This document shows positions 3,679-63,694 of a stretch of 64,000 bases of DNA, one piece after another. Numbering within the stretch: position 1 is the stretch's first letter; each line of letters starts with the position of its first letter. A program made the position numbers and the translations under genes. The notes beneath the pieces are model-generated. The model saw only the letters and a list, made by a program, of their open reading frames with translations, did no database searches and was not told the DNA's origin. The DNA is from Anolis carolinensis. Taxonomy: Eukaryota. Location of the stretch: NCBI RefSeq assembly GCF_035594765.1, contig NW_026943825.1, positions 16,918,590 through 16,982,589 on the forward strand. The letters run 5' to 3'.

Positions 3679-6600
3679 GCAACTGCAAAAGGCCACCCGA
3701 CTGGGATCTGCACGCATCATCCAAAAATACATCACACAGTCCTAGACACTTGGGAAGTGTTCGACTTGTGATTTTGTGATATGAAATCCAGCATGTCTAT
3801 CTTGTTTGCTGTGTCATACAACAACAACAACACATCACACAGTCCTAGACACTTGGGAAGTGTTCGACTTGTTAATTTGTGATACGAAATCCAGCATATC
3901 TATCTTGTTTGCTGTGTCATAATAAAATAATAATAATAATACAAACTTTGTTTATACCCCGCCACCATCTCCCCACGGGGACTCAGGGCAGCTCACATGG
4001 GGCAAGGCCCGACTAGCACAATTCACAAAAACAACAGCATAAATACATTGAACAATATACAAAAAAAACCACAGTAAGACAACAAAACAAGAGTTAATAC
4101 AGCAGTAATAATATCAATCAACCACCAAGTGCAATTCAGTCGATTTCATTGGTGGGGGGGACTGCAGCAGCAATATAAAAATAACATCATCAGTTAAAAT
4201 ACCAGAATAAAAGGGACCTAATAAATTTCAGGATAGAGTGATAATGTTATAAACATGCCTCCCCTTCCCTCCTTCCTTCCTTCCTTCCTTCCTCCCAGGG
4301 CAGAGGTGCGGTGCCACTTCCAGGGCTGCGGGGAGGCCTTTGCCTCGCTGGCGGCCTTTGAGCACCACTACGAGCTGCTCCACCGGGACGCCTGCTCCGC
4401 CTGCCGCCGGGCCTTCCCCTCGCGGCGCCTGCTGGACCTCCACCTCCTGGAGCAGCACGGGGCCGCCCTCTTCCAGCTCCAGGCCCAGCAGCGCTGTATG
4501 GTAGGAGCTCCACGGCACCACACAAACCCTATTGGGGTGGGGACTGGGGGTGTCCCTGGCTGCCTGTGCCTCTGCTCAGAGGGTTTCCCTTCACTTCCCG
4601 TCCCTGTGATGATTTTGGGGGTTTTGGGGGATGTGGCTTGTTGTGGACACAAGGGCTCCTTTTGTAGCTACACCTCTTGCCCATAAAATATTACTATTAT
4701 TATTAATTTTATTTTTCTATCCCACCTCCATCTCCGCAAAGGCACTCGGGGCGGCTGACATGGGGCCACGCCCGAAGAACAAAACATGAACAGAGTTAAA
4801 ACATAAATAAACACGATCAACAAAACAGATCAAATAAAACACTACAAGAATTGAGTATTGTAAGTAAGCTATTTACTGAAGAATATATTTAAAAAGCCAA
4901 GCAATAAAAATGATTAAAAGGTAAAGTCATGTTTTACCTCACTTCCAAGGGGCAGGAATACAGCACAGGATACAAAAACACAAGGCAGATTAAATCCCAA
5001 AAGATAGGGCATCAGCTTGGTAACTGGAACCAGGAAAGAGTTATGAGAGCATAACTTGCCAGCAAAATCCATATAGAAAACTTAAGAGCATGAATAAGCA
5101 TGACAGACGTGAAACACCAACGTTGACTCCGATAATCCACAGGTTGAAACCCTTTCCCTTAAAAGGCCTCCTGCAATGAGAAAACCTGGGAGCTTTCTCT
5201 TTGTTTACAAAAGTCTCGCCTCCTATCTGCCAGCTCATTGCCCTCTGCAGTTGCATCTGTGCCTGAAGGTTCTCCTTCAGAAAAGCAGCCCCTTTCAGGA
5301 ATTTGGCCTTGAGGCTCCTCTGGCTGTAAGACAGGCCTGATCATACCATCATCCCCATTGCAATCAGACACAGGGCCAGAATCAGACACAAGCCCAGGCC
5401 CAGAATACTCAGTGACATCAGGCACTAACAGGTGACACAGGCTGAACTACGACACCAGGAGAGTGTCCACTGGCTCTCCCTCTGCTTCCTCCTTCTCTCT
5501 CTGTCTCCCTCCAGTTCCAGTGTCTAGTGGAGGGCTGCCCAGAGGCCTTCAGGAGCCCAGAGGACCGCAAGGAGCACCTCGTTGCTGCCCACTGCTACCC
5601 CCCGGACTTCCGCTTTGACAAGACCCCCAAACGCGGGAGGTACTTGACTCCACAGGGAGGGAGGGAGGGAGGCCCAATGGTTTCATCCCACTCCCATGGC
5701 ATTGTGCTCCTCCTCTTCCTCCTCCTCCTCCTCCTCCATTGAGGCCTTGTGGGGAAGGTTGGGGAGGGGAGGGCTCTCCTGCCTTTCAAAGGGCAGCCAC
5801 CACGTCGCTTGCCCCTCATCCCTCCCCTCTCTTCCGGCAGCAGAGCGAAGGCAAGGAGACCACGATCCGGGGAGGACGGCACTGCACCCATGGAGGTAGC
5901 GGACCAAAAGGAGATGGCGGAGGAGGCCATGGAAGAGGGGCCCAAAGGGTCCCGCCAGGCCCGGAGGCAGGTGACGCCCAGGTAGCGGCCCTTCCCATCC
6001 TGGTGGGCGGCTTTGTCTTTTGGGGGAGCCACTGTGCCAGAGAGGGGGGAAATATGTTCATGCGAGAGGATAATAATAATAATTTTATTTGTTATACCCC
6101 GCCCCATCTCCCCGAAGGGACTCGGGGCGGCTTACATGGGGCCAAGTCCAGTCATCAACAATATAATAACAAAGCAATAAAACTGGTCAAACAACAATAG
6201 AAGCAAGTCATAAAAAATTACATACAAAATATAATGAGAAAATCTTGTATTGGATCCAGAGGAACTGGGCCAAAAGTGCTAGTTGTCGATATCATCAGGG
6301 AGGGAGGGGTGGCTATCCAAGTTGTCATAGCCATTAAAGTCGTACATAAGGGCCGGGCTGTGGCGCAGCTGGCTAGTAACCAGCTGCTATAAATCACTAC
6401 TGACCGAGAGGTCATGAGTTCGAAGCCCGGGTCGGGTTAAGCCTCCGACCATTAATAGCCCCGGCTTGCTGTTGACCTATGCAGCCCCGAAAGACAGTTG
6501 CATCTGTCAATTAGGGAAATTTAGGGACGCTTTATGCGGGAGGCTAATTTACAACACCATAAAACTGCCAGCAAAACATGAGGAAAGGAATGAGGAAGTA

Positions 6601-47600: not shown

Positions 47601-50600
47601 CCAGCTCCTGCCAACCTAGCAGTTTGAAAACATGCCAATGTGAGTAGATCAATAGGTACCGTTCCGTCGGGAAGGTAATGGCGCTCCATGCAGTCATGCC
47701 TATGGCCACATGACCTTGGAGGTGTCTACGGACAACGCCGGCTCTTTGGCTTAGAAATGGAGATGAGCACTGACCCCCAGAGTCAGACAGGACTGGACTT
47801 AACGTCAGGGGAAACCTTTACCTTTACCTATTATTATGTCTATTATATTATATTATATTATTATTATTGTGTTTATACCCTTCTTGATCTCCCCCGAAGG
47901 AGACTCACAGCGGCTATTCATCTATTATTAGTATGAGAACATATTGTTATTAATATTATATATTTTATTATTGCATTTATTTATATCTTGCTTGATCTCC
48001 CCCAAAGGAGACCCGAAACAGCTATGAATCTGTTATTAGTATTAGAATGTTTTATCTTTTTAACCAACTTGGGTGTAGCATTAGTTCTCTCCCAAATTAT
48101 TTGTTGTCCCTTTCCGCCAATGCACCCTCTCTCTCTCTCTCTGTCTCTGGCAGTACCTGTATGCCTTCAGCATCCTCCCCATGGCTTCCATGGACCCGGC
48201 GGAGTTGGTCAAGCAGCCCCAGGACGTCACCGAGAGCCCCTACCGGCAGCCCTGGGGCAGCAAGGGCAGCGCCTCCCACCTCCTGCCAGGCGCAAAGGTA
48301 TTTTGGGGACGGGAGGGAGGGAAGATAAGGGCCTCTTCTGCAGGCCAGTAGGCTGTTAGGAATTGTGGGAGTTGCAGTCCAAAACACCCGGAGGGCCGAA
48401 GTTTGCCTGAGCCTGCAGAAGAGGGCTGGATTATTTATTTATTTATTTATTTATTTGCTACATTTATATGCCGCCCTTCTCACCCTGAAGGGGACTCAGA
48501 GCGGCTTACAAATTAAATTTACATACAATATTATATTTGTATAGTACAATACTGGCAATAAATTACTATATTGTACTGTATCAATATATTGTAATATTAT
48601 TAGTAATATTACGTGTAAAATATAATATATAATTAATATTATTATATTGTATTATTAGTATTACAGTAGAGTCTTACTTATCCAAGCCTCGCTTATCCAA
48701 CATTCTGGATTATCCAACGCATTTTTGTAGTCAATGTTTTCAATATATCATGATATTTTGGTGCTAAATTCATAAATACAGTAATTACTACATAGCATTA
48801 CTGCGTATTGAACTACTTTTTCTGCCAAATTTATTGTCTAACATGATGTTTTGGTGCTTCATTTGTAAAATCATAACCTAATTTGAGGCTTTTCCTTAAT
48901 GTCTCCTTATTATCCAACATATTTGCTTATCCAACATTCTGCTGGCCTGTTTATGTTGCATAAGTGAGAGACTACTGTATATCGTATTACAATATAATAT
49001 TATGAATATTATATGTATATACAATATGCTATAATTATTATATATTATTGTAAATTATATTGTATATATAAATACATATACATAAACACACATACACACA
49101 CAAATATGTGTGTGTGTATATATACATATATATATACTAGCTGTGCCCGGCCACGCGTTGCTGTGGCAAAGTGGTGGTGGTATTGGTTAAAAATTGTTGT
49201 GTAATTTTTATTTCATGTTATTTGCATTTTTTAAATTAATTTTATTGTAAGTTATATTTTTATTATATTTTATTATTTTCTTGTAATGTTTTTAGTTATT
49301 TTCTGTTATTATAGTATTTTATTGTATTAATTTTTTAGTGTTTTTTATTATTTTTTTATTGGGTTGCTAGGAGACCAAGTTGGAGGAGCTTAGCCTTCTA
49401 ACTGGCAGCAATTGGATAAAAGCAATTATTCCTCTCCCTCTAATTAGGACTTGATTTTTCTTTTCTTTTTGTTGTATCAACCTAGAGGCGTGGATGATGG
49501 GTTGTGTTGTCAAATTTCGAGGTTGGGGGGCCTGTAGTTTTGTTGTTTTGTGGGTCGCCGTGATGCCATCACTCTTTTATATATATAGATATATATATAC
49601 ACACATACATACACATATATATAAAACTAGCATAGCATGTTATTGACCAGCCTCATTATAATTCTATCCTGAATGTTATTAGGCTCCTTTCATCAGGGTA
49701 TTTTAATCTAATGATTTTATCTTATATTGCTGCTATAGTCCCCCCCCTTTGAAGTTGACGGATTTGCATTGGTGGTTGTTTGATATTATTACTGTTATAT
49801 AAACCTTTGTTTTAACTTCTGTTTTATCATCTTCTTGTGTTTTAAACTGTGTATATTGTTTAATGTATTTGTGCTGTTACTTTTGTAACGTTGTGAGCCG
49901 CCCCGAGTCCCCACGGGGAGATGGTGGCGGGGTATAAATAAAGTTTTATTATTATTATTATTATTGCGGGGAGGGGCCTCCAGCTGCTGCAAAGGGACAA
50001 GATGGGACTCTCTTCATGGCTCCCTCTTAGCTCTGGCACCCGAGCATCAGTTGGCCTTTGGGGTCTCTCCCCACTCTCTGACCCGTCTTCTCTCTGCCCG
50101 GCTCTGCAGGGAGAAGACACTGAGCTGGCCTCCCAGTTCTTCTTCGACCTGAGCCGGAAGCCCAAGGGCCGGAAGCGGCCGGCGGAAGGAGAGGGGAGAG
50201 GGAAGCAGCAGCAGCCCCCGCGCAGCAGGCTTCCCCGTGAGTCCCAGAGGGAAAGGGCTGCCGGGTTTGCTCCGGGGATGCAAACAGAGGCCGGAGGGAG
50301 AGGGACGGTGGGGCTTCTTGCTTGTGGTGACGCTGCCCTTCCTCCCTTCCTTCCTTCCTTCCTTCCTTGCTTTCTTTCCCCGCAAAGCCCTCCCGCCGGC
50401 CGCCTGCTGGTTCTGCCTGGCCAGCCCCCAAGTGGAGAAGCACCTGGTCGTCAGCATCGGCTCCCAGGTGAGGCCGGGAACACCCCTCCCCGCCCCCGTG
50501 TTCCGTCAAAAAAATGGCGAAAGTTTAGTAAACTACAAAATAGTATAATAATAATATAATATAGTATAAATAATAATATAATAACACAACAGCAATAATA

Positions 50601-51479
50601 TAAAGTTATAATAGAACTCTGTTACATTATGATGTGTGTTCCCTGGTAATAATAATAATACTAATAATATAAATAATAATATAATATCGCAACAGCAATA
50701 ATAATATAGTTATAATAAAACTCTGTAATACTATGATTAAAGGAGCCCCGGTGGCGAAGTGTGTTAAAGCGCTGAGCTGCTGAACTTGCAGACCGAAAGG
50801 TCCCAGGTGCCAACCCGGGGAGCGGAATGAGCGCCTGCTGTTAGCTCCAGCTCCTGCCAGCCTAGCAGTTCGAAAACATGCCAATGTGGGTAGATCAATA
50901 AGTACTGCTCCGGCGGGAAGGTAATGGCGTTCCATGCAGTCATGCCGGCCACATGACCTTGGAGGTTTCTACGGACAACGCCGGCTCTTCGGCTTAGAAA
51001 TTGAGATGAGCAACAAACCCATAGTTGGATACAACTAGACTTAACGTCAGGGGAAACCTTTACCTTTAATGCTATGATGTGTGTTCCTTGGTAATAATGA
51101 TTATAATAATGATAATTATAATAATAATAATACAGCAATAATAATATAACATTATAATAGCACTCTAACACTATGATGTGTGTTCCTTGGTAATAAAAAT
51201 GATATACTAATAAAAATAACACAACAGCAGTAATAATATAAAGTTATAATAGCACACTGTAACACCATGATGTGTGTTCTTTGGTAATAATAATGATAAC
51301 ATAATAATAATCACAATAACAACACCTATTGATATACACACATTTGCATGTTTTCAAACGGTTAGGTTGGCAGGAACTAGGGCTAACAGTGGGAGCTCAC
51401 CCACTGATTCGAACTGCCAAACCTCAGGTCAAAAGTTCAGCAGCGCAAAGGTTTAACCCATTGCACCATTGCAGCCCTC

Positions 51480-51537
<58 letters not shown>

Positions 51538-54500
51538 AAAATTATAATATAGTAATATAATATAATAATATAATGCTATGTAATTATAATATAATACTAT
51601 ATAGTAGTAATATAATATAATATTTACATAATGTTAGGGTATTGGAAATAATCTCTTTAAATAATATTAAATGATGTTAAACTATGAATGTTGCAGCCCC
51701 GAGGAAGGGCTGCATCGTGGGCCGAATGGTTGGTGGTCTACCACCCTGCTTTGCCCCCTCAGTGCTACCTGGCGCTGGCCAAGGGGGCCCTGTGCGCGGA
51801 CCACGTCCTCATCCTGCCCGTTGGCCACTGCCAGTCGGTGGTGGAGCTGCCCGGTGACGTGGTGGAGGAGGTGGAGCAGTACAAGGCGGCCCTGCGCAGG
51901 TTCTTTGGGTCCCGGGGCAAGCGGTGCGTCGTCTACGAGAGGAACTTCCGCAGCCAGCACCTCCAGCTCCAGGTGAGGAAGGAAGGAGGGAGGGAGAGAG
52001 AGAGAGGATAACTTCATTGTCATTGCATGTGGTGCAAGGGATTGGAATGCCATCCCCAATATAAGTAGAATTACCCAAACAAAGCACCCGTCCTTCCACA
52101 TTCGAATCACTCTTGCATTGCCAATGTATTGGTGAATGGATGGATAGATAGACAGAGTCACAGGTGAAGAGAGAGAGAGAGAGATGGAGGCAGATCAATA
52201 CATAGATGATAGAGGAAGAGTAATAATAATAATAACAACTTTTATTTTTATACCCCGCCTCTATCTCCCCAAAGGGCGGCTTACATGGGGCCGAGCCCGA
52301 ATAAAAACAATAGCAGTATAAAACACAACAACTGACCCTTTTTACACAAAAAGCGCTGGCCATCCGCGAGAAGATGGAAGTGGACAGCTGTGATATTAAT
52401 GCCAATAATAAAATCCAAATTTAAAATTTACTATGGACAAGGCACTAGTTTTACTTACCCTTGCCCCCGCTTAAACCTTACCTTAAGGGAATAATTAATC
52501 TTAATTTTAATCTTTTTATTCTGTACAGTAGAGTCTCACTTATCCAACACTCGCTTATCCAACATTCTGGATTATCCAACGCATGTTTGTAGTCAGTGTT
52601 TTCAATACATCGTGATATTTTGGTGCTAAATTCGTAAATACAGTAATTACTACATAACATTACTGTGTATTGAACTACTTTTTCTGTCAAATTTGTTGTA
52701 TAACATGATTTTTGGTGCTTAATTTGTAAAATCATAACCTAATTTGATGTTTAATAGGCTTTTTCTTAATCCCTCCTTATTATCCAAGATATTTGCTTAT
52801 CCAAGGTTCTGCCGGCCCGTTTATGTTGGATAAGTGAGACTGTACTGTATGTGTGTGTGTGTATTGGGGATGGTCTGTCTCAAAGGCAAGCAGTTCGTTC
52901 CGATCCTGAAAACACTGCAGAGTCTTGGTCACAGTTAGCAGAGATGTTATAGCCCAACCTCTGACCGTTGTATCGTAGGTCACCAGCATGAATGGAGAGC
53001 TACTATATATATAAATTACCAGAACCCTACACCCCTCCTTGCACATTCTCCTCCCACATTGGGAGAGGGACAGCCTTCTGGTGATGGTTTTGGGGGTGTC
53101 TGTATGGCGGCTGCCCTGCCTTCCCGGCCAGGCGGAAGCAGTGCCTGGTTGGGCCACGGCTGCCACAGAGTGACCGGGAGGAAGGGCCGGAGGAGGGTCT
53201 GGGAGAGGAAGGGCCCTCCTCACGCCCACCCCCCTCCCACAAGATGACCCATAAGTTTAAGCCTGAAGCGAGGAGGCCGTTGCCTTTCTCTGTGATGAAG
53301 AGCTGTGCTGAGGGGCGCTCGGCCCCCGTGATGTGCCTCCCTCTCTGGGGGAACAAGGCCTGCCTCTGTCCTATATGTGCCCCCCTATTCACTCCCCAAA
53401 CCACGCCCCCCCTTCATCTCCCTCCAGGTGGTCCCGGTCCCCCAGCAGCGCTGCTCCGCCGAAGACATCAAGGAGGCCTTCCTGGCCCAGGCCGAGGAGC
53501 AGCGCATTGAGCTGATGGAGATCCCGGAGCATTCTGCTCTCAAGCAGGTGGGTCGCCTTGAAAGAGTAAACACACAGCCCCCCGCCAGGCAGGAACGCCA
53601 ATTCCGCCTCTCGCGGCCTCCTCCTCCACCTGCGCAATGGGACGGCCGGCCTCAGAGGCAAGCAGTTAGTTCCGATCCACAAAACACTGCAGAGTCTTGG
53701 TCAGAGTTGGCAGAGATTTATATCACAAGTTGCCCACCAGCTTGAGTAAACACACTTGAGCTCCGGCTTTCATCTAAACTCCTTTGGAGGTTTAGTCTGC
53801 ACAATGGGACAAGTGGTCTCGAAAGCAAACAGTTCAGATCCCCAAAACACTGCAGAGTCTTGGTCAGAGTTAGCAGAGATTTTATAGCCCATCCTCTGAC
53901 AGTTATATAGTAGCTTGCTGGTTTGAACAAGAACACTCGAGCTCTGGCTTTCATCTAAACTCTTGGAGATCTGAACCCTTTCTAACTCAAGGGGCAAGCC
54001 TTTTCCTTCCTTCTGGGGTGCGCTGGAGGCGATAGCCACCCACGAGACGCCCACGTCCTCCTCTCTTGGGCCTTGCAGATCGTGCAGCCGGGGACACCGT
54101 ACTTCTACGTGGAGCTGGACAGCGGAGAGAAGCTCCTCCATCGCATCAGGAAGAGCTTCCCCTTGCAGTTCGGGAGGTACGTCGTCGTCACTGCTGGGTG
54201 GCCATCTGTCAGGGGTGCTTTGATGGTGCTTGGACATTTCCTGAATGGCAGAATAAAGGATGGAGGGCCGCTGGGGTTTTCCACTGAAATATTGTTTTGT
54301 TTATGTTGCGAAGAGGCGATGTGTTTATATTTGCAAAGAGGCGATGTGTGAATTTGTGAAACCTGTGACAGGGAGGAATCCTTTTGATCTAACCACTTGC
54401 TTCCAATTGTAAACAGCCTTTCAAATATGGAGGGAAGATATGTTTGGAGTATATATATATCAGGAGGATTTGGAGGGTAAAGAAGGATAACAAAACTGAT

Positions 54501-56896
54501 GAACTTATATGAGGAAGTATGGTAACTTATATAGGAAAGTACGGTAACTGCCACCAACGTGAGGTAATGTCTTTTAAAGTATGTGATGAATAGTCAATGG
54601 TAATGGCTTTCCCTCAGGCTCAGAGTGAGGCAAGGAGACTGATCTTTATAAACAACAAAAATCAAGTTTATTTGTACATAAGTGTGTGGTTTCAATATAT
54701 AGATGTTTCAGGATCTTAGTTACAGTGCAGTCTTGTGTGAATGAATATTTCTTAAACAACTTCTTTCAGAATGTAATAGATTAAACTCCCGGTCAGCTTA
54801 TATCTTCAGCCTTTCCCTGAATGACACTAAGCTGCCGTCTGCCTGTGTAAACAAGCCTCAATCCTTACAGTCATAAACTTAACAGTATTTCANNNNNNNN
54901 NNNNNNNNNNNNNNNNNNNNNNNNNNNNNNNNNNNNNNNNNNNNNNNNNNNNNNNNNNNNNNNNNNNNNNNNNNNNNNNNNNNNNNNNNNNNNNNNNNNN
55001 NNNNNNNNNNNNNNNNNNNNNNNNNNNNNNNNNNNNNNNNNNNNNNNNNNNNNNNNNNNNNNNNNNNNNNNNNNNNNNNNNNNNNNNNNNNNNNNNNNNN
55101 NNNNNNNNNGGCGGTGCCCGGGTCATTTGAGAAAGGCACTGTTTGCCCGTGTTCCAAGTATAGCCTAGATCCAGTGTCATCTGGGTTCAGTGGGTGTGGG
55201 TGAACAACTTCTCCCATATGCAAGTCCATGGTCCATCCTCCTCCAAACAATGCCAGGATGTAGAGTAGGTCGTGTGTGCCAAGTTTGGTCCAAATCTGTC
55301 ATTCGTGTCAATTGCAGTGGTCTCAGGAAGTGAGTGAAGGCACTGTAAGTCCCATCATCCTAGGCATGTCCTTCCCCAATCTGCACCAAGACGTAAAGGG
55401 GGTTATTGGGGATCTGTTTGGTCCAGTTTCGTCACTCGTGGGCGTCACAGTGGTCTGTGGGAGTCAAAGCATTTGAAAGTACTGCAAATCCCATCATCCG
55501 TGGCCTATCCTCCCCCAAACGGCACCAGGCCGTAAAGTGGGTCATAGGGGGTATGAGTGTGAAGTTTGGCCCTGATCTGTCATTGGTTAGAGTAACGTGG
55601 TCTGTGGGAGCGGAAGTGTTTGAAACTACTACAAATCCCATCATCCATGGTCCCTCCTCCCCCAAATGGCACCAGGACATAAAGTGTGTCATGGGGGATA
55701 TGTGTGCCAAGTTTGGGCCTGGTAATGGTTTATTATTTACAGTATTTATTATTTATTTATTATTTATTTATTTATACTGTCCACAGTATTATTTACAGTA
55801 TTAATTTGTTCCTGGCGGTCACAGTGGCCTGTGAAAGTGCCAGCCAATCAAAAAACTGCCACATACACAGATACACCGCTGCACTGCCGCATACAAACAC
55901 TGACTTTTATTATATAGTATACTAGCTGTGCCCGGCCACGCGTTGCTGTGGCAAAGTGGTGGTGGTATTGGTTAAAAGTTGTTGTGTAATTTTTATTTGA
56001 CGTTATTTGCAATTTTTTTATTAATTTTATTGTAAGTTATATTTTTATTTATTATATTTTATTATTTTCTTGTATTATTTTTAGTTATTTTCTGTTATAG
56101 TATTTTATTGTATTAATTTTTAGTGTTTTTTATTATTTTTTATTGGGTTGCTAGGAGACCAAGTTGGAGAAGCTTAGCCTTCTAACTGGCATCAATTGGA
56201 AAAAAGCAATTATTCCTCTCCCTCTAATTAGGACTTTATTTTTCTTTTCTTTTTCTTGTATCAACCTAGAGGCGTGGATGATGGGTTGTGTCGTCAAATT
56301 TCGAGGTTGGGGGGCCTGTAGTTTTGTTGTTTTGTGAGTCACCGTGATGCCATCACTCTTTTATGTATATAGAAGATAGATATAGATACAGATAAGATAT
56401 AGACATGGAACTCCTGGTGGCACAGTGGGTTAAACCGCTGAGCTGCTGAACTTGCTGACCGAAAGGTTGGTGATTTGAATCGGGGTGAGCTCCCGCTATT
56501 AGCCCCAGCCTCTGCCAACCTAGTAGTTGGAAACCATGCAAATGTGAGTAGATCAATAGGTACCGCTTCTGCAAGAAGGTAACAGCGCTGCATGCAGTCA
56601 GTGGCCTTGGAGGTGTCTATGGACCGACCACGCTGCCGCCTCTTTGGCTGAGGAATGAGCACCAACCCCTGGACTTGGACACGACTGGACTTAATGTCAG
56701 GGCAAACCATTACCTGTCTGTGTATGTATATATGTAATGTCCTTTCTGCAGGGAGGTGCTGTGCAGTCCGGCGGTGCTGGACCTGCCTGGCCGGGCAGAC
56801 TGGAGGGCCTGCAAACTGGCGCCCGAGGAGGAAGCGGCCGCCGCTCAGGACTTCCGCCGGGCCTTCGAGCCTTTCGACTTGCCCCAAGAGGACTGA
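40452..56896 (+). CDS. CWF19L1: CWF19-like protein 1, complete, 14 exons, about 547 aa
   Basis: Exons 40452-40480, 40593-40677, 40758-40836, 42793-42894, 45561-45778, 45976-46097, 46189-46273, 48154-48297, 50110-50236, 50388-50467, 51763-51972, 53428-53547, 54079-54176, 56752-56896; total 1644 nt. Motifs [69 protein letters not shown] at 57071. Confidence 0.97.
41080..41379. mobile_element. Tc1/mariner-pogo-type MITE
   Basis: TIRs and TA target-site duplication. Confidence 0.8.
41428..41750 (+). mobile_element. Sauria SINE
   Basis: Full head, core and tail. Confidence 0.85.
41905..42444 (-). mobile_element. Non-autonomous Helitron
   Basis: a|CTAGctgtgcccggccacgcgttgc...tatatatatAGA|t. Confidence 0.85.
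42920..44270 (+). repeat. Degenerate minisatellite (about 38-bp unit) with two MITE insertions (43109-43431, 43635-43928)
   Basis: Unit tagcaaagcaattggtaactttcttggtactttgttttca; MITE TIRs with TA target-site duplication. Confidence 0.85.
44611..45495 (-). mobile_element. 5'-truncated Dong/R4-clade LINE with a restriction-like endonuclease domain
   Basis: Open frame with CRLC..ETIDH..SCC knuckle, RHN, and PD...D..K endonuclease motif; both ends in (TAA)n. Confidence 0.9.
46323..46826 (-). mobile_element. Non-autonomous Helitron
   Basis: CTAG and TC termini at an A|T site. Confidence 0.85.
47020..48050 (-). repeat. LINE-tail-derived degenerate tandem array with a Sauria SINE insertion (47516-47828, +)
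   Basis: Units tttatatcctgctt.atctccccaaaggagactcaaagcagctatgtatctattattagtatt; reverse complement of the 15420-15880 unit. Confidence 0.7.
48664..48977. mobile_element. Tc1/mariner-pogo-type MITE
   Basis: TIRs and TA target-site duplication. Confidence 0.8.
49137..49589 (-). mobile_element. Non-autonomous Helitron
   Basis: CTAG and TC termini. Confidence 0.85.
50741..51067 (+). mobile_element. Sauria SINE
   Basis: Full length with ACCTTT tail. Confidence 0.85.
52526..52847. mobile_element. Tc1/mariner-pogo-type MITE
   Basis: TIRs and TA target-site duplication. Confidence 0.8.
53103..53244 (+). ncRNA. SNORA12: Intronic box H/ACA snoRNA candidate, probable SNORA12 orthologue
   Basis: Hairpin 1 (TGGCGGC/GCTGCCA; CCCGGCCAGGC/GCCTGGTTGGG), hinge AGAGTGA, hairpin 2 (GGGAGG/CCTCCC; GAGGAGGGTCT/GGGCCCTCCTC), ACA at 53239-53241; about 140 nt. 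From recall, human SNORA12 is hosted in a CWF19L1 intron. Confidence 0.7.
54893..55109. other. Assembly gap
   Basis: Run of N. Confidence 1.
55110..55920 (-). mobile_element. Second Helitron-like family with internal repeats of about 120 bp
   Basis: Repeated ccaagtttggtcc..cccatcatcc units; end cactgacttttattatatag; the other terminus lies in the gap. Confidence 0.5.
55922..56373 (-). mobile_element. Non-autonomous Helitron
   Basis: CTAG and TC termini. Confidence 0.85.
56407..56715 (+). mobile_element. Sauria SINE
   Basis: Head, core and tail. Confidence 0.8.
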
Positions 56897-57700: not shown

Positions 57701-58367
57701 CATGGAATCAGTGCCGTGGAGGGGGAACAAGTCTTGGTTGAACATTATTATGGAATCAGTGCCGTGGAGGGGGAACAAGTCTTGGCTGAACATTATTATG
57801 GAATCAGTGCCGTGGAGGGGGAACAAGTCTTGGCTGAACATTATTATGGAATCAGTGCCGTGGAGGGGGAACAAGTCTTGGTTGAACATTATTATGGAAT
57901 CAGTGCCGTGGAGGGGGAACAAGTCTTGGCTGAACATTATTATGGAATCAGTGCCGTGGAGGGGGAACAAGTCTTGATTGAACATTACAGTAGAGTCTCA
58001 CTTATCCAAGCCTCGCTTATCCAAGGTTCTGGATTATCCAAGCCATTTTTGTAGTCAATGTTTTCAATATATCATGATATTTTGTTGCTAAATTCATAAA
58101 TACAGTAATTACAACACAACATTACTGCGTATTGAACTACTTTTTCCGTCAAATTTGTTGTATAACATGATGTTTTGGCGCTTAATTTGTAAAATCATAA
58201 ACTAATTTGATGTTTAATAGGCTTTTCCTTAATTCCTCGTTATAATCCAAGATATTCGCTTATCCAAGCTTCTGCCAGCCCGTTTAGCTTGGATAAGTGA
58301 GACTCTACTGTATTATGGAATCAATGCCGTGGAGGGGGAACAAGTCTTGGTTGAACATTATTATGGA
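57701..58367 (+). repeat. 48-bp minisatellite (7 copies) with a MITE (57988-58310) inserted after copy 6
   Basis: Unit atggaatcagtgccgtggagggggaacaagtcttggttgaacattatt; MITE has a TA target-site duplication. Confidence 0.92.
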
Positions 58368-58933
58368 AGTCAAGATTTGTCCTACGTTTAGGCGTCCGCT
58401 TCCCAAGGCAGGCCAAAGGCTTCAGTCGTAAAATAATCAGAGAATACTCTTGCGAAATAAAAGACCGGGAACGTAGCTGGCCCTTGGGCGGTTCTTCCAG
58501 AGGGAGGTCAGAGGGAGCCGACTTCTGACCTGGATAGATAGATAGGTACGTGCAATCTTTGATTTGGTTTGTAAGTATTCTTTCCTTTTTAATTGTGCCA
58601 TCCTCGCTTTGCAAGTAGTTGCTCTGCTCTTTGGTGGCCGCAAATTGTGTCGAATTGAGGCTCTGATGAGAGATTTGTTGCAAAGCGGGAACTAAAACGA
58701 TGTTCGTGCAGTTTTTGAGTTGGTCATTTGGTCAGTCGAGGGGCCGGTCTGGCAAGTGAGGCCCGGATTGCGACAAAGAGAAGCAGCCAGGTCCGGATTC
58801 CTGCGCAGATCGCTCTGCTGATTCCAAACCAGAGTCCAACCCCGGAGGCGGCTGCTTTGTTCTTCTTCGGCCGGAGAGCGAGGAAGGAGCAGCCAGATCC
58901 CTGCGAGTCTGCCTGGGAAGGAAGGAAGGAAGG

Positions 58934-58970
58934 ATGCAACGAGTGAGGCACGCTCTCAAGCTGCGACAAG
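58934..58970 (+). CDS. Candidate alternative first coding exon of the CYP2 gene (MQRVRHALKLRQ-G)
   Basis: aggATG with an upstream in-frame TGA at 58757; donor AAG|GTGAGA in phase 1 matches acceptor ttcctttccag|GC at 59613. Confidence 0.5.
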
Positions 58971-59557
58971 GTGAGACGATTCCCCCAAAATAATGCTCTA
59001 GCCCAGTGGTTCTCAACTTTCCCAAAGCCATGACCCTTTGATACTAGGCATGTCCGATCGATGAAAAAAATGTTTCAATTCTTGTTAGTAGGGGGCGCTG
59101 GCGCTTCGATATAGAAAGTATTTCCGATTTTTTCACCCCAAAATTTTGGATATTTCCGAAAATTTGTAATGATTCTAAATGTTTCTAAAATGGCATGCGC
59201 AATCGCAAAAAAAAAGGAACCCGGTGGGTGGGGGACTTTTACAGGGCTCTCCCGCCCTCATTTCTTGAGCTGTCCTCATCAATTTTGCAATGCCCTTGCA
59301 AGTTGTGCAAAGATACTTTGAAAACTAGAAATTCCCTTGCTATATTTGTAAGCAAGGAGGACACTGGAAATCAATGGTGTCTCTGGCTATGTGATCCCAC
59401 AAGCCTCAACCCAATGCCTTCCATTAGAAATGGACCAAGCAATGCCCAGGCAAGTTGTGCAAAGATACTTTGAAAACTAGACATTCCCTTGCTAAGAGAA
59501 AGAACCAGCAACAAAACCCTTTGTGCCCTTGGCTGCTTGTTGTCCAGAGCAAACTTC

Positions 59558-62500
59558 ATGGCTGCTGAAGTGCTAATTGCAAGCTTTCTAATTGCGAATT
59601 CTTCCTTTCCAGGCTGGAGAGGGAAGGGGTCTTGTGTGCCCCCCGGCTTGCCCCCCGGTCCGCGCCCGCTGCCCTTCCTGGGGAACGCCCTGCAGGTGGA
59701 CACCACGGACTTCCCCAGGTCCGTGGAGAAGGTGAGTCCCCAGGACGTGGGGCGCAGGGTGCTCACGCCGACCCCTCTCTTCTCTCCCTCGACGCCTCCT
59801 TTTCCTCCCTGCAGCTGAGCCAGCGCTACGGGCCGATCTTCACGCTCCACCTGGGCTCCCAGCGGGCAGTGGTGCTCTTCGGACACGAGGTCGTGCGGGA
59901 GGCCTTGGGGCCCCGAGGGGAGGACTTTGGCGGACGGGGCGGGACCCCCATCCTGGACAGGACGGCCGGCGGGACAGGTGGGAGTGCTGCGGGGGAAGGA
60001 GCCTCGCTCGACAACCCTCTCCCCTTTTGGGTTTTGGGACTAAACCAGAGCCCGAATGGAAGGACTTCCAATCGAGACCGGCCCTGTTGGCTTGCATCTA
60101 CGGCTTCGGTCCTCCCTCCCGGCTATTGGACTCCTACAATTCCTAATAGATAGATAGATCGAGTAGGGACACTCCAAAGGTCATCTAGACCAACCTCCCT
60201 GATCTTATTATTATAATAAATAATAATAAAACTTTATTTATATACCGCCCTATCTCTCGGATGGGACATACAGTCATAAAAGCAAACGCAAACATTACAT
60301 AACAACATAATACACATTATTAAACAAAGTAAAACAATACAGTTATAACAATAAATCACACTTACATGACCATGGGTAAATAGATGTATTAAATGGAGTG
60401 ATGGAAATTAAATGGAATGATGGACCTTAGAGAGGCCTACTTTCAGGTCTTAATAGATAGAGCAGGCATGGGCCAACTTCGGCCCTCCCTCCAGGTGTTT
60501 GGAGTCCAACTCCCACAATTCCTAACAGCCTACCGGCCGAAGTTAGCCCATGCCTTTGATAGAGTGATCGACCTAAGAGAGGCCTACCTCCAGGCCCCAA
60601 TGGAGAGAGAGAGGTGACTTCTGAAGCATCTGCATCAGTCACTAGGAATTGTGGGAGTTGGAGTCCAAATGCCTGGAGGAGGGGCCCAAGAGAGATCCTA
60701 CAGCCCCCTCCCCCTCCCCCTTCTAGGCATCGGGTTCAGCAATGGAGAGACCTGGAAGCAGCTCCGGAGTTTTGCCGCAGAGACGCTTCGTGAGCTGGAG
60801 GCGCCGACCGAGGAGTGGATTCAAGAGGAGGCCGCCTTCCTGGCCGAGAGGCTGGGCAGCACCGAAGGTGGAGGAGGGGGGAGGGGGCCCAGGTGGCAGC
60901 GGGGAGGAAGGGGGGGGCCTCGAGCCCTGGGAGGGGCCAAGTGTGGTGGGGGGGGGCTGAGGGGAGTATCACTTCCTGTGTGTGTGTGTGTGTATATATA
61001 TAAGTGTGTGTGTGTGTGGAGTGTTGGGAGGGGTTGTGGTGGGAGGGGCTTGTAGGGAGTGGGAGGAGTCAAGGGTGGTGGGAGGGGCCTGGAGCTGTGG
61101 GAGGGGCTGGTGATAAGCCTTTGCATGTACCCTGCCTTTATCTCCCATAGGGACTTGGAGCGGCTTACACAATGACGCAACAGTGCGATCCATATACAGT
61201 AAAACCCCACTTGTTCGAGCCTCCGTGCAATCCGAGCAGGTGAACGGGGATGGCCGCAAAGGCCCTCCCTGTTCACCTGCTCGCTGGCGTGCGTGTTGCT
61301 AGGTAGATAGCAAGCTACCTAGCAACATGCACGGGGCGCTCGCCCCTTGGGAGGTGGCCCCTGCGTGTTGCTAGGTAGATAGTAAGCTACCTAGCAACAC
61401 GCAGGGGGCACCTCCCAAGGGGCGAGCGCCCCGTGCATGTTGCTAGGTAGCTTTCTATCTACCTAGCAACACGCATGTCCGACTCCTTCGCCACGCCGGG
61501 CACCTGTGTTGCCACCCCGGCATGACGAAGGAGCCTAGGCATGGACGGGCGGGTGGGTGGGTGAACGGGGAGGGCTTTTGCGGCCCTCCCCGTTCACCCA
61601 CCCGCCGGACAAAGGGGCTTTGTTCCTTTGGCGAAGGCTTGGAGCCAGGAAAGCAGGGAGGGGCCAGAGGAAGCATGGGTGTGCTGATGCCCATACCTGC
61701 CTGTGCTGCTCCCCCCCCTCCCTCCCTCCGCAGGGCGGCCCCTGGACCCCTCCCGCCTGCTGAGCGCGGCCTCGGCCAACGTCCTCTGCTCCGTGGCCTG
61801 TGGCTTCCGCTTCGACTACCAAGACCCCGAGTTCCTGACCTTCCTGCGGCTCCTGGAGGAGAACGCCCGGCTCCAGACCAGCCCCATGACCAAGGCAGGC
61901 CGGCCAGCTGGCCAATGAGAGCGAGAGAGAGAAGGGCGGGGGAGAAGGGCGGGGGAGCATGCCTGTGGGATTGTGGGAGGGGGTGGAGCCCCGGCCGGAT
62001 AGAGATGCACAGGTGCCAACACAGTGGCGTGTGTGTCTGGGGGGGGGGGGTGTATGGGGAGTGAACGTGTTCTCCCTCCGAGGCCCCTGAGTTTCCCCTC
62101 CGCCTCCCTCCCAGCTGTACAACGTTTTCCCGGCCCTCCTGGACCACCTTCCCGGCTCCCACCAGACCATCTTCCGAAACACGGAGGAGCTGAAGCGCAC
62201 CATTGCCGTGAAGGCGGAGGCGCAGAAGGAGGCCCTGCGGCCCGGTCCCCCCCGCAACTTCATCCATGCCTTCCTCCTCAGAATGGAGCAGGTAACACGC
62301 GTGTGGGCATATCACGGCTAGTGGGCCTCATCCGGGAGAAGCAAGCGCAGTCTCAAGGGGGGAGGAGCTCTTTTGCCCATTGAAACCCCTCTTGCTGTCA
62401 GACTCGAAGGTCTTGGAGTTAAAATCAAGCTCACCACCATAAATCGCTGAATTCCTTCTTTCCACAATCCTCAAAAGACAGTTCTAAAGTTTTCCCACTC

Positions 62501-63365
62501 AAACCTCCTGTATATTATGTTAATGTGGGATTTGTATATTGGTAGTGTTTAAACGAAATTTGTGTCTAGCATGTATTGCATCCTCCAGGAAATGCTATAG
62601 TGTGTAAAGAGTTAATTGTTAAGAAGCTGTATTGACCTTGGATGTGTGGCTAGAACACAGAGAGGAGTGTCCAGACTACAAGTGTGTTTGTATATAGCTG
62701 ACTGCATCAGATGAGCTCTGTTCTGCCTGCTGGGAAGATCTGCGCTGTTTGTCTAGAGCGAAAATTTTGTCTATTGTCTGCAAGTCTGTTTGTTTTGTTC
62801 AGTAAACTTTGTACATACTTTTTACATTGTCTCTGACGTTCCTTCGTTCTACGCTCAACTGACATCATTCATTTGCTGCTACGCTGTGCGCATTACTCTG
62901 ACAATTGGTTATGGGCCCAGATCCCAGACCAGTTTGACCAGGCCCAATTCCTATCCGCCCCCCAGTGGGCAAACACTGTGCCTACAGTCTGTTAACCGCA
63001 GTTCAGTTTCCCTCTCGAAACAGATGTCTTATTCCCACTGCCTTCCCCAGCTGTTCCCAGCATCTCTTCCTGCTGGGAAGAGATGCAGCATCCGCCCTTC
63101 CTTATGTCAGAGAGCCGAAGCAGCCAGTCCCAGGCAGAGACCGCGATCCTGACACTTGTGTTTCTCCTTCCCTTCTTCCCTTCCGCTCTGTCCCCAAACT
63201 CCCTGCAGGAGAAGCAGCAGCAGCAGCAGCAGGAGGGCGTCTCGGTCTTCAACCTCCAGAGTTTGGTGAGAAGCACGCTGGACCTTTTTGTGGCCGGAGC
63301 CGAGTCCACCAGCCTCGTCCTCCAGTACGCGCTGATGGCGCTCGTGAAGTACCCCGAGGTGCAAG
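59558..63365 (+). CDS. Cytochrome P450 family 2 protein, exons 1-6 (partial; continues beyond the window)
   Basis: Exons 59558 (or 59613)-59731, 59815-59977, 60727-60867, 61734-61894 (GC donor), 62115-62291, 63209-63365. Motifs PPGPRPLPFLGN, YGPIFTLHLG, NGETWKQLR, RFDYQD, DLFVAGAESTS, KYPEVQ. Exon sizes 163, 161 and 177 are typical of CYP2. Subfamily not assignable by eye. Confidence 0.92.
61197..61610. mobile_element. MITE-like element with an internal palindrome of about 185 bp
   Basis: TA-CAGTAAAACCCC start; palindrome 61291-61475 built from the same units as 22334-23166. Confidence 0.6.
62617..62945 (+). mobile_element. Ty1/Copia LTR plus PBS
   Basis: TGTT...ACTCTGACA (62903), ATT, GGTTATGGGCCCAG (62907-62920). 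LTR start approximate. Confidence 0.7.
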
Positions 63366-63694
63366 GTGGGCAGCCCTGGGCCTGCTGCTGCGTCATGAGT
63401 GAAACGTTAAAAAGATTCTTGCATTCCGTCTCCAGTGAGACAGCATAGATCAGGCACTTGGCAGAGAAAGAAGGTAGGCACATATAGACTATATAGTGAC
63501 TAAAGGGGATATAATTTTTACTCAGCATTCATACACTCATATGCATTCACTCTACATCAGGGCTGGGCAAACTTCGGCCCTCTCTCTGGGTGTTTTGGAC
63601 TTCAACTCCCACCATTCCTACTGGCTGTTAGAAATGGTGGGAGTTGAAGTTCAAAACACCTGGAGGGGAGGGCCCAAGTTGGCCTCAGCACTCC

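What the first reader, a model, noticed from the sequence alone, without database searches (positions are those of the whole stretch)
58740..59731. CYP2 P450 with a candidate extra first exon that replaces the ER anchor with a mitochondrial-type presequence
Seen: the 5' part of the canonical exon 1 contains a strong acceptor (ctaat branch point, ttcttcctttccAG at 59611-59612). About 640 bp upstream, a CpG-rich stretch with no other ATG ends in ATG CAA CGA GTG AGG CAC GCT CTC AAG CTG CGA CAA G|GTGAGA, which is in the matching phase. The spliced N-terminus would be MQRVRHALKLRQGWRGKGSCVPPGLPPGPRPLP: basic, with no acidic residues and no hydrophobic run. The alternative ATG at 59558 has canonical exon-1 spacing but gives only a weak anchor (MAAEVLIASFLIANSSFPG). 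Known: CYP2 enzymes normally start with a signal-anchor of about 20 hydrophobic residues, and some (CYP2E1, CYP2B1) reach mitochondria through cryptic signals. Inference: this lizard CYP2 may be hard-wired by a new exon as a mitochondrial or soluble enzyme, or dual-targeted by alternative promoters.
Basis: partly seen in the sequence, partly recalled or inferred. Interest (0 to 1): 0.8.

Follow-up and report, generated by a model that had tools for sequence, protein, structure and literature searches.

The report
Anchor-replacing first exon in lizard CYP2
In anoles and a spiny lizard, a liver-type cytochrome P450 gene has replaced the segment that normally pins the enzyme into the ER membrane with a short, positively charged start encoded by a new upstream exon, so the enzyme probably works somewhere other than inserted in the ER membrane.

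Summary
The window is Anolis carolinensis. The exon model is therefore already in public annotation. I found no paper on its meaning.

Comparison with other species gives the main evidence:
- A. sagrei and Sceloporus undulatus, at the same syntenic locus, keep the mini-exon's ATG, reading phase and GTGAGA donor.
- They also keep the acceptor at the same place.
- The old anchor-coding stretch upstream of that acceptor has decayed. Sceloporus has a frameshift, an in-frame stop and no ATG there. A. carolinensis is at random-level identity. A. sagrei has an 81-nt insertion, and ATG 59558 is GTG.
- All seven non-iguanian squamates compared, plus turtles and birds, keep a normal anchor.
- The acceptor was already latent in the anchor's Leu/Phe/Ser codons.
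- The gene stays under purifying selection (dN/dS 0.25-0.27).

Not shown: four RNA runs gave no contig across 58970/59613, and exon 1 was barely covered. The cellular compartment is untested. The new N-terminus is basic, has no acidic residue and no hydrophobic run, but no clear amphipathic helix. A mitochondrial location is plausible, not demonstrated. Dual start use is disfavoured. The scan has no earlier finding of this on other DNA.

The parts
58780..58833 (+). Conserved non-coding block 100-150 nt upstream of the mini-exon; candidate promoter or leader element
   Evidence: blastn finds it between Anolis and Sceloporus (L002:5808-5862, 74.5% over 55 nt, E 6e-5). It is also recognisable about 2 kb upstream of the normal exon 1 of Podarcis (L005 ~5910-5974). 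In A. sagrei it lies inside a 78%-identical block.
58934..58970 (+). Coding part of the new first exon (exon 1a): 12 codons plus 1 base, MQRVRHALKLRQ(G), donor AAG|GTGAGA
   Evidence: Sequence. It equals residues 1-12 of RefSeq XP_062821333.1 and XP_008122723.1. Homologous exons with the same ATG, phase and donor exist in A. sagrei (L006:6001-6037) and Sceloporus (L002:6001-6043). The 5' end of the exon (TSS) is not known.
58971..59612 (+). Intron 1a (642 nt), carrying repeat-derived DNA and a 152-nt duplication
   Evidence: Repeats. Very high repeat-derived contig depth over 58997-59290. The intron is 1149 nt in A. sagrei and about 1.9 kb in Sceloporus. It is not alignable between Anolis and Sceloporus.
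59546..59612 (+). Decayed remnant of the ancestral signal-anchor coding segment, now at the 3' end of intron 1a; it contains ATG 59558 and the polypyrimidine tract and AG of the acceptor
   Evidence: In the alignment with Podarcis and Elgaria exon 1, the old ATG aligns to AGA at 59546-59548, and ATG 59558 aligns to the old TGG GGG codons. Identity to any other species is 36-37% here, against 68-74% in the exon-1b part. A. sagrei has GTG at the ATG and an 81-nt insertion.
59613..59731 (+). Exon 1b: basic WRGKGS linker, PPGPRPLP hinge, donor AAG|GTGAGT
   Evidence: Sequence. PDB CYP2 chains align from the LPPGP motif onwards. DNA conservation with Sceloporus and A. sagrei begins 8-10 nt upstream of 59613.
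59815..59977 (+). Exon 2 (163 nt)
   Evidence: Sequence. An RNA contig joins it to exon 3 (X13 record 3).
60727..60867 (+). Exon 3 (141 nt; 9 nt shorter than usual for CYP2, from the C-D loop deletion)
   Evidence: Sequence; RNA contig junction; the 4-residue gap is shared only by iguanians.
61734..61894 (+). Exon 4 (161 nt), followed by a GC-AG intron
   Evidence: Sequence. Joint 61892/62113 with 2 ambiguous bases in three runs.
62115..62291 (+). Exon 5 (177 nt)
   Evidence: Sequence; best PDB matches are CYP2C5, 2B4, 2A13 and 2C9; RNA contigs.
63209..63365 (+). Exon 6 (157 nt; poly-Gln insert; I-helix AGAESTS); exons 7-9 lie beyond the window
   Evidence: Sequence; RNA contigs end at 63365 and continue spliced; exons 7-9 found in L001.
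58325..58912 (-). Transcribed stretch just upstream of the mini-exon. In two runs it is joined to 61840 by a junction with GT..AG on the minus strand (an antisense RNA). It is not part of the CYP2 coding model.
   Evidence: Contigs in all four runs end at 58907-58915. Joint 58911>61839 has ends CT..AC. Minus-strand acceptor score 16.6 (best in the window), donor 7.4. The AG is not conserved in A. sagrei.

Best explanation
Shown. This is the 5' end of a CYP2C/2H-like P450 gene of Anolis carolinensis, lying between a CwfJ-family gene and an MFS transporter gene. In the common ancestor of anoles and phrynosomatid lizards a short upstream exon (58934-58970) acquired an ATG and a strong donor. It splices into an acceptor at 59612/59613. 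That acceptor was already latent in the pyrimidine-rich Leu/Phe/Ser codons at the end of the signal-anchor coding segment. The splice removes the whole hydrophobic anchor. It replaces it with 12-14 basic residues placed in front of the retained basic linker (WRGKGS) and the PPGP hinge. The old anchor-coding stretch has since decayed as intron, while the rest of the gene stays under purifying selection.

Inferred. Without a hydrophobic N-terminus the nascent chain cannot engage SRP as an ordinary microsomal P450 does. It is therefore made on free ribosomes and localised after translation.
- My best single guess (about 0.4) is import into mitochondria. The route would be the basic N-terminus plus the linker, the same region that acts as the cryptic mitochondrial signal of CYP1A1 and CYP2E1. 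Electrons would then come from adrenodoxin.
- About equally likely (about 0.4) is an enzyme that is soluble or peripherally bound to the cytosolic face of membranes.

The confidence given is for the exon replacement, not for the compartment.
For:
- RefSeq models of A. sagrei and Sceloporus undulatus start with homologous peptides (MHRVRRALKVGQ, MQRARRATMALVRQ). Seven non-iguanian squamates, three turtles and three birds start with MEPxGxxxIxLLxCxxCLxF.
- Orthology: CwfJ-CYP2 synteny holds in Anolis, A. sagrei, Sceloporus and Podarcis. A tree built without the N-termini gives a squamate clade and an iguanian clade, each with 100/100 support.
- DNA of the mini-exon: ATG, phase and the donor AAG|GTGAGA are kept in all three species. 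Between Anolis and Sceloporus there is an in-frame 6-nt indel and four synonymous third-position differences.
- Decay of the old anchor: Sceloporus has a frameshift, an in-frame stop and no in-frame ATG upstream of the acceptor, so only the mini-exon supplies a start. A. carolinensis is 36-37% identical there, against 68-74% in exon 1b. A. sagrei has GTG at 59558 and an 81-nt insertion.
- Conservation begins 8-10 nt before the acceptor.
- The latent acceptor is present at the same position and phase in Podarcis (score 12.2). Elgaria has one 7 nt downstream (14.1).
- dN/dS is 0.25 (Sceloporus-Phrynosoma) and 0.27 (Anolis-Sceloporus), against 0.20 (Podarcis-Elgaria).
- The heme-binding and ExxR motifs are intact.
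- N-termini: 25 residues before PPGP, charge +5 to +7, no acidic residue, best 19-residue hydropathy -0.4 to -0.6.
- Precedent: residues just behind the anchor of CYP1A1 act as a mitochondrial signal once the anchor is removed (PMC2141697). Lys24/Lys25 of CYP2E1 do the same, and mitochondrial CYP2E1 runs on adrenodoxin (PMC8774478).
- A 4-residue deletion in the C-D loop on the proximal face is specific to iguanians.
Against: - No RNA contig across 58970/59613 appeared among those listed for four runs; 48 joints were not shown.
- The only contig covering exon 1 (X8 record 16, 59528-59718, depth 2.6) runs straight through the acceptor. That run also holds many intron-retaining contigs, so this may be pre-mRNA.
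- Contigs over the upstream region stop at 58907-58915, about 20 nt before the ATG. Either the leader is very short or these samples hardly make the mRNA.
- The three RefSeq models are not independent of each other, because predicted proteins feed later annotation runs.
- The amphipathic moment of the mini-exon peptides is not above shuffles (fraction at or above observed: 0.70, 0.14, 0.21).
- No import, cleavage-site or redox-partner test was possible.
- Engineered CYP2 proteins whose anchor was replaced by a short basic tag stay functional with the microsomal reductase (recalled, not checked here). Loss of the anchor therefore need not mean mitochondria.
Confidence: 0.78

Rival explanations
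1. In A. carolinensis both starts are used. Transcripts from the upstream promoter give the anchorless form. Transcripts starting inside intron 1a use ATG 59558 and give a form with a weak 12-residue anchor, so the enzyme is dual-targeted.
For: The frame is open from 59474 through ATG 59558 into exon 1b. The spacing to PPGP is canonical. One RNA contig (59528-59718) runs unbroken across the acceptor. The Ensembl/UniProt model H9GN06 uses the unbroken reading.
Against: ATG 59558 is not the ancestral start, which aligns to AGA at 59546-59548. It is GTG in A. sagrei, where an 81-nt insertion and a 1-nt deletion follow. The stretch is 36-37% identical to every other species. Its hydropathy (1.27) is well below that of real anchors (2.0-2.8). 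The contig comes from a run rich in intron-retaining contigs.
Confidence: 0.1
2. The unbroken exon 1 with ATG 59558 is the only real start in A. carolinensis. The mini-exon is an annotation artefact that spread between RefSeq runs.
For: No RNA junction was seen here. Predicted proteins are reused as evidence in later annotation runs. The pattern alone has a chance probability of about 6.5%.
Against: The DNA of Sceloporus and A. sagrei keeps the ATG, frame, phase and donor of the mini-exon, whatever any annotation says. Sceloporus has no other possible start. The anchor remnant is not conserved even between the two anoles. The gene is under purifying selection, so it needs a start codon.
Confidence: 0.07
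3. The gene is decaying in iguanians. Loss of the anchor and the C-D loop deletion are steps towards a pseudogene, and the N-terminus has no function.
For: The anchor is lost. The C-D loop is shortened and has lost its basic residues. The I-helix Thr is replaced by Ser. RNA depth is low, with much intron retention.
Against: Full-length open frames with intact heme-binding and ExxR motifs exist in A. carolinensis, A. sagrei and Sceloporus, and in exons 3-9 of Phrynosoma. dN/dS is 0.25-0.27, like the anchored orthologues. Junctions 2-3, 4-5 and 5-6 are correctly spliced in RNA. The I-helix change is shared by all squamate members, including anchored ones.
Confidence: 0.04

Closest known systems
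Orthologous squamate CYP2 genes annotated 'cytochrome P450 2H1/2H2/2C31-like' (Podarcis, Elgaria, Rhineura, Eublepharis, Python, Crotalus, Pantherophis)
   Same: Same syntenic position behind the CwfJ-family gene (Podarcis). Same clade with 100/100 support. 59-66% identity. Shared AGAESTS I-helix. Same exon 1b onwards.
   Different: They start with a normal signal anchor of about 20 hydrophobic residues encoded in one unbroken exon 1. The iguanian genes start in a separate upstream mini-exon and lack the anchor. Iguanians also carry a 4-residue C-D loop deletion.
Bimodally targeted microsomal P450s: CYP1A1 (P450MT2) and CYP2E1, which use cryptic mitochondrial signals
   Same: Basic residues immediately behind the anchor act as a mitochondrial signal once the anchor is removed or bypassed (CYP1A1 residues 33-44, PMC2141697; CYP2E1 Lys24/Lys25, PMC8774478). 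The lizard protein keeps that basic linker (WRGKGS) and exposes it near the N-terminus.
   Different: In those enzymes the anchor is encoded, and a fraction of molecules is diverted by proteolysis or by PKA phosphorylation at Ser129. Here the anchor is absent from the gene product, five or more extra basic residues are added, and the RRFS kinase site is not kept (LRSFA). Nothing here shows import.
Mitochondrial-clan P450s (CYP11A, CYP24A, CYP27A) with cleavable presequences
   Same: P450s with no hydrophobic anchor and a basic N-terminal extension.
   Different: They belong to a different clan; the best solved-structure matches of this gene are CYP2C5, 2B4, 2A and 2C9. Their presequences are longer (recalled: roughly 24-39 residues). 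Here there are 25 residues before the PPGP hinge, a motif typical of microsomal P450s.
Engineered N-terminally truncated CYP2 proteins used for crystallography (2C5, 2B4, 2C9 and others)
   Same: The anchor is removed and PPGP sits about 10 residues from the N-terminus of the solved chains. As I recall, the anchor is replaced by a short Lys-rich tag, much like the natural basic mini-exon peptide.
   Different: Those are laboratory constructs. They stay active with the microsomal reductase and behave as soluble or peripheral proteins (recalled, not checked here). This one is a natural, lineage-wide, selected form.

Membership tests
Cytochrome P450 family 2 (CYP2C/2H-like) | P450 domain with closest similarity to CYP2 enzymes | tested here: met
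   Pfam PF00067 is recorded on the product. Exon 5 matches CYP2C5, 2B4, 2A13 and 2C9 chains at E 1e-10 to 1e-8.
Cytochrome P450 family 2 (CYP2C/2H-like) | Heme-thiolate motif FxxGxRxCxG and K-helix ExxR | tested here: met
   FSMGQRACLG and EAHR are present in P0151. These columns are invariant in alignment A2. The exons concerned lie beyond the window, in L001.
Cytochrome P450 family 2 (CYP2C/2H-like) | I-helix (A/G)Gx(D/E)T(T/S) with the conserved Thr | tested here: not met
   The motif is AGAESTS, with Ser in place of the conserved Thr. Nine of the eleven squamate members of the clade share it, including anchored ones; A. sagrei has AGAASTS and Crotalus/Pantherophis AGAQSTS. It is therefore not linked to loss of the anchor.
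   Exons 2-6 are 163/141/161/177/157 nt with matching phases. Exons 7-9 are present in L001. The gene has one extra 5' exon.
Cytochrome P450 family 2 (CYP2C/2H-like) | Proline-rich hinge PPGPxPLPxxGN | tested here: met
   LPPGPRPLPFLGN in exon 1b.
Microsomal (class II) P450 topology | N-terminal signal anchor of about 20 hydrophobic residues | tested here: not met
   The best 19-residue Kyte-Doolittle mean is -0.36 (A. carolinensis), -0.62 (A. sagrei) and -0.41 (Sceloporus), against 2.0-2.8 in anchored relatives. The unbroken alternative reaches 1.27.
Mitochondrial matrix-targeting presequence | Net positive N-terminal 20-30 residues without acidic residues | tested here: met
   Charge +6, +7 and +5, with no Asp or Glu, in the 25 residues before PPGP in the three species.
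Mitochondrial matrix-targeting presequence | Amphipathic helix | tested here: inconclusive
   The hydrophobic moment of the mini-exon peptides is 0.27, 0.64 and 0.65. The fraction of shuffles reaching those values is 0.70, 0.14 and 0.21.
Mitochondrial matrix-targeting presequence | Import into mitochondria, with or without cleavage by the processing peptidase | not testable with these tools
   No targeting predictor and no experiment is available here.
Bimodally targeted P450 (CYP1A1/2E1/2B1 type chimeric signal) | Hydrophobic ER signal followed by a cryptic basic signal, switched on by proteolysis or PKA (RRxS near residue 128) | tested here: not met
   The hydrophobic part is absent. The basic linker WRGKGS is kept. 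The kinase-site position reads LRSFA/LRRFA/LRQFA, with no Ser at the canonical place.

The most novel reading that the evidence does not exclude
Pleurodont iguanian lizards carry a recent, independent conversion of a microsomal CYP2 into a mitochondrial, adrenodoxin-dependent P450. It arose in one genomic step: exonisation of an upstream leader that splices into a latent acceptor inside the anchor codons. Remodelling of the proximal redox-partner surface (the C-D loop deletion) followed. This would be a natural replay of how the mitochondrial P450 clan is thought to have arisen from a mistargeted microsomal enzyme.
Probability: 0.33. Interest if true: 0.85.

Novelty: new variant of a known kind. 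Interest (0 to 1): 0.68.

Why it matters
Microsomal P450s are defined by their N-terminal signal anchor. Routing to mitochondria is known only as a partial, regulated diversion of anchored enzymes, or in the old mitochondrial clan.

Here a CYP2 has lost the anchor at the gene level and kept the new start. This happened in the lineage leading to anoles and phrynosomatids (recalled timetrees put their split at tens of millions of years). The gene remains under purifying selection. Anchored orthologues in other lizards and snakes serve as natural controls.

That makes three questions directly testable:
- Where does an anchorless CYP2 go in a vertebrate cell?
- Does its redox partner change?
- How can a single splice-site event relocate an enzyme?

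It also warns annotators that the 'canonical' unbroken start used by the Ensembl model is probably wrong for this gene.

Tried and rejected
- First reading, later dropped. After the RNA lay I took the mini-exon for a chance pattern lying beside an antisense RNA. The RefSeq models and the Sceloporus and A. sagrei DNA overturned that.
- RNA test. The four runs chosen turned out to be spliced RNA, but exon 1 was covered by a single low-depth contig in one run. No 58970/59613 joint was listed; 48 joints were not shown. The test is therefore uninformative, not negative.
- Word searches for RNA-derived protein fragments with P0151:1-90 and with region 1-52 found nothing new.
- P0001 and P0155 are not on record as genes. 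A. sagrei was reached through the second cluster member, P0273.
- Phrynosoma (L003): exons 1-2 and the mini-exon were not found, and the stretch has five N gaps, so no conclusion is possible.
- The amphipathic-helix test was not significant.
- Three paper searches found the CYP1A1 and CYP2E1 precedents but nothing on anchorless lizard CYP2. A recalled report of N-terminally truncated CYP2C8 splice variants going to mitochondria was not found in the library and is not used as evidence.
- A deletion allele or a template-switch artefact as the cause of the 58911>61839 joint was rejected. The junction is exactly GT..AG on the minus strand, with the best acceptor score in the window.
Full report
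**What is in the window.**
The stretch 58740-59731 is the 5' end of a CYP2 gene on the + strand. Downstream I mapped these exons:
- exon 2: 59815-59977
- exon 3: 60727-60867
- exon 4: 61734-61894
- exon 5: 62115-62291
- exon 6: 63209-63365

Their sizes are 163/141/161/177/157 nt and the phases fit. Exons 7-9 lie beyond the window end. No other CYP2 lies in the window. Exon 5 matches solved CYP2C5, 2B4, 2A13 and 2C9 chains. The LPPGP hinge of exon 1 aligns to the start of those chains.

**The observation.**
- ATG 58934, 12 codons plus one base, and the donor AAG|GTGAGA after 58970;
- the acceptor ...ttcttcctttccAG ending at 59612, with ctaat about 19 nt upstream;
- a matching phase;
- no other ATG between 58703 and 58933, with GC 0.61 and CpG o/e 0.71.

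I ranked sites inside the window with a rough splice matrix recalled from memory. The donor (10.7) is reached once per about 11.6 kb of strand. The acceptor (9.2) is reached once per about 0.8 kb. An in-phase ATG-ORF-donor of that strength occurs in 6.5% of random 2-kb stretches. ATG 59558 gives canonical spacing but only about 12 hydrophobic residues (hydropathy 1.27, against 2.0-2.8 in relatives).

**RNA.**
The single run search returned runs labelled only 'RNA?'. I laid four of them, from two studies, on 58000-63500. They are spliced RNA: contigs join exon 2 to 3, exon 4 to 5 (a GC-AG intron) and exon 5 to 6.

Exon 1 is almost uncovered. By the depth bins, X9, X13 and X14 have nothing on it. 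X8 has one contig (59528-59718, depth 2.6). It runs straight through the proposed acceptor, in a run that also holds many intron-retaining contigs.

No 58970/59613 joint is among those listed, but 48 joints were not shown, and the real 2-3 and 5-6 joints are missing from that table too. The test is therefore uninformative.

Contigs over 58325-58912 exist in all four runs and all stop at 58907-58915. In X8 and X9 they are joined to 61840 by a junction whose ends (CT..AC) are GT..AG on the minus strand. Its acceptor is the best-scoring one in the window (16.6). At least part of that RNA is therefore antisense to the CYP2 gene. This first led me to doubt the mini-exon.

**What changed my reading.**
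The representative search with exon 5 and a cluster look-up identified the gene as Anolis carolinensis.
- The Ensembl-type model H9GN06 uses the unbroken exon 1.

The exon model is thus already in public annotation. The locus (L001) shows a CwfJ-family gene upstream and an MFS transporter gene downstream, all on the + strand.

**Other species.**
A word search with the RefSeq protein found orthologues. In the N-terminal alignment:
- A. sagrei and Sceloporus undulatus start with homologous short basic peptides, followed by GW.
- Elgaria, Rhineura, Podarcis, Eublepharis, Python, Crotalus, Pantherophis, three turtles and three birds start with a normal hydrophobic anchor.

CwfJ-CYP2 synteny holds in Sceloporus, A. 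sagrei and Podarcis. A tree built after removing the N-termini recovers a squamate clade and, inside it, one iguanian clade, both at 100/100. This fits a single origin of the mini-exon.

**DNA evidence, independent of any annotation.**
- Sceloporus keeps the ATG, an in-frame 6-nt indel, four synonymous third-position differences and the identical donor AAG|GTGAGA (score 10.7). Its acceptor lies at the aligned position.
- Upstream of that acceptor, the exon-1b frame of Sceloporus hits a stop after 21 codons with no ATG. The old start ATGGAGCCC survives, but in another frame. Only the mini-exon can start the protein there.
- A. sagrei keeps the 37-nt mini-exon (6 differences, 2 of them synonymous) and the donor.
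- In A. sagrei the position of ATG 59558 reads GTG. An 81-nt pyrimidine-rich insertion and a 1-nt deletion separate it from the acceptor.

In a four-species alignment of exon 1:

| Pair | Identity in anchor part | Identity in exon-1b part (all pairs) |
|---|---|---|
| A. carolinensis vs any other | 36-37% | 68-77% |
| Sceloporus vs Podarcis or Elgaria | 66-67%, with a frameshift | 68-77% |
| Podarcis vs Elgaria | 76% | 68-77% |

- The ancestral ATG aligns to AGA at 59546-59548, so ATG 59558 is new.
- blastn conservation between Anolis and the other two iguanians begins 8-10 nt before 59613.
- The acceptor is older than the exon. Podarcis has CTCTTCTTCCTCTCAG at the same position and phase (score 12.2), made of the Leu/Phe/Ser codons of the anchor. 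Elgaria has one 7 nt further on (14.1).
- A non-coding block at 58780-58833 is shared with Sceloporus and is recognisable about 2 kb upstream of exon 1 in Podarcis. Podarcis lacks the ATG and the GT at the place equivalent to the mini-exon. The new exon probably arose from existing upstream sequence.

**Is the gene alive?**
I computed Nei-Gojobori dN/dS exon by exon, without building a joined sequence:
- Sceloporus-Phrynosoma: 0.25
- Anolis-Sceloporus: 0.27
- anchored Podarcis-Elgaria: 0.20

The heme-binding and ExxR motifs are intact.

The I-helix AGAESTS is shared by nine of the eleven squamate members of the clade, including anchored ones. A. sagrei has AGAASTS, and Crotalus and Pantherophis have AGAQSTS. 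A 4-residue deletion that removes the basic C-D loop is specific to iguanians.

**Mechanism.**
Shown: a conserved upstream coding exon replaces the anchor through a pre-existing latent acceptor.

Inferred: a protein with 25 residues before PPGP, charge +5 to +7, no acidic residue and no hydrophobic run cannot be inserted co-translationally like a normal CYP2.

Two precedents point to mitochondria. The residues just behind the anchor of CYP1A1 are a mitochondrial signal once the anchor is removed (PMC2141697). Lys24/Lys25 of CYP2E1 act likewise, and the mitochondrial enzyme runs on adrenodoxin (PMC8774478). The iguanian-only loss of the proximal C-D loop would fit a change of redox partner.

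Against this, the amphipathic moment is not above shuffles. Engineered anchorless CYP2 proteins (recalled) remain peripheral and reductase-dependent. I put mitochondria at about 0.4 and a soluble or peripheral cytosolic-face enzyme at about 0.4.

**Housekeeping.**
Full-length searches used the public protein P0151. One local script concatenated the two short pieces only to translate them, and the result equals P0151:1-52.
- The window's N runs were not filled. One script counted 217 mismatching positions between the window and L001, which is the length of the N run, without printing or using those letters.
- Searches of the scan's own notes found nothing similar on other DNA.

Noticed in passing
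window 58325-58912 (-) joined to 61840 (-): A spliced RNA antisense to the CYP2 gene. In runs X8 and X9 the joint 58911>61839 has GT..AG on the minus strand. Its acceptor uses the (TTCC)n tract 58916-58934 as polypyrimidine tract. The assembler threads it together with sense exons 4b-9 into one 1717-nt contig, probably a chimera of the two strands. The acceptor AG is not conserved in A. sagrei.
   Followed up: partly
window 61895-62114: Intron 4 of the CYP2 gene is a GC-AG intron (AAG|GCAGGC ... CCCAG|CT). The junction is confirmed by RNA contigs in three runs.
   Followed up: yes
window 57702-58365: A 48-nt tandem array (6 copies at 57702-57987, one more at 58315-58362) is split by an element of about 325 nt with terminal inverted repeats (CAGTAGAGTCTCACTTATCCAAGC...). 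Copies of this element give contig depths of 1e5-7e5 in the RNA runs.
   Followed up: no
window 60797-60820 (exon 3): The C-D loop on the proximal face lacks 4 residues and all basic residues (ELEAPTEE instead of NFGMGKKSIEE). The deletion is shared by both anoles, Sceloporus and Phrynosoma only. Other squamates of the clade have the full-length loop.
   Followed up: partly
window 63215-63232 (exon 6): A CAG/poly-Gln run adds 5 residues before the I-helix in the two anoles only. The read tool skipped 63201-63243 as a repeat.
   Followed up: no
window 59732-59814 and 63366-63473: Intron 1 and the start of intron 6 are retained in several RNA contigs. The read-through of intron 6 is the C-terminus of the old RefSeq fragment XP_008122721.1 and of H9GN06, so those models were built on such transcripts.
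   Followed up: partly
window 59659, 59674, 59687: The one exon-1 contig (run X8) differs from the window at three sites within 30 nt. Two are synonymous third positions and one changes Ala to Thr in GNALQ. This is probably allelic variation.
   Followed up: partly
window 61290-61475: A 72-nt unit, repeated 2.6 times and internally palindromic (GCTAGGTAGATAGCAAGCTACCTAGC), lies in intron 3.
   Followed up: no
L002:23828-24726: The Sceloporus gene spans 30 kb and holds weaker extra copies of exons 6 and 7 (67% and 52% identity to the model), probably a partial duplicate inside an intron.
   Followed up: no
window ~48934-56896: The gene immediately upstream of the CYP2 is a CwfJ-family (CWF19-like) gene on the + strand.
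   Followed up: no
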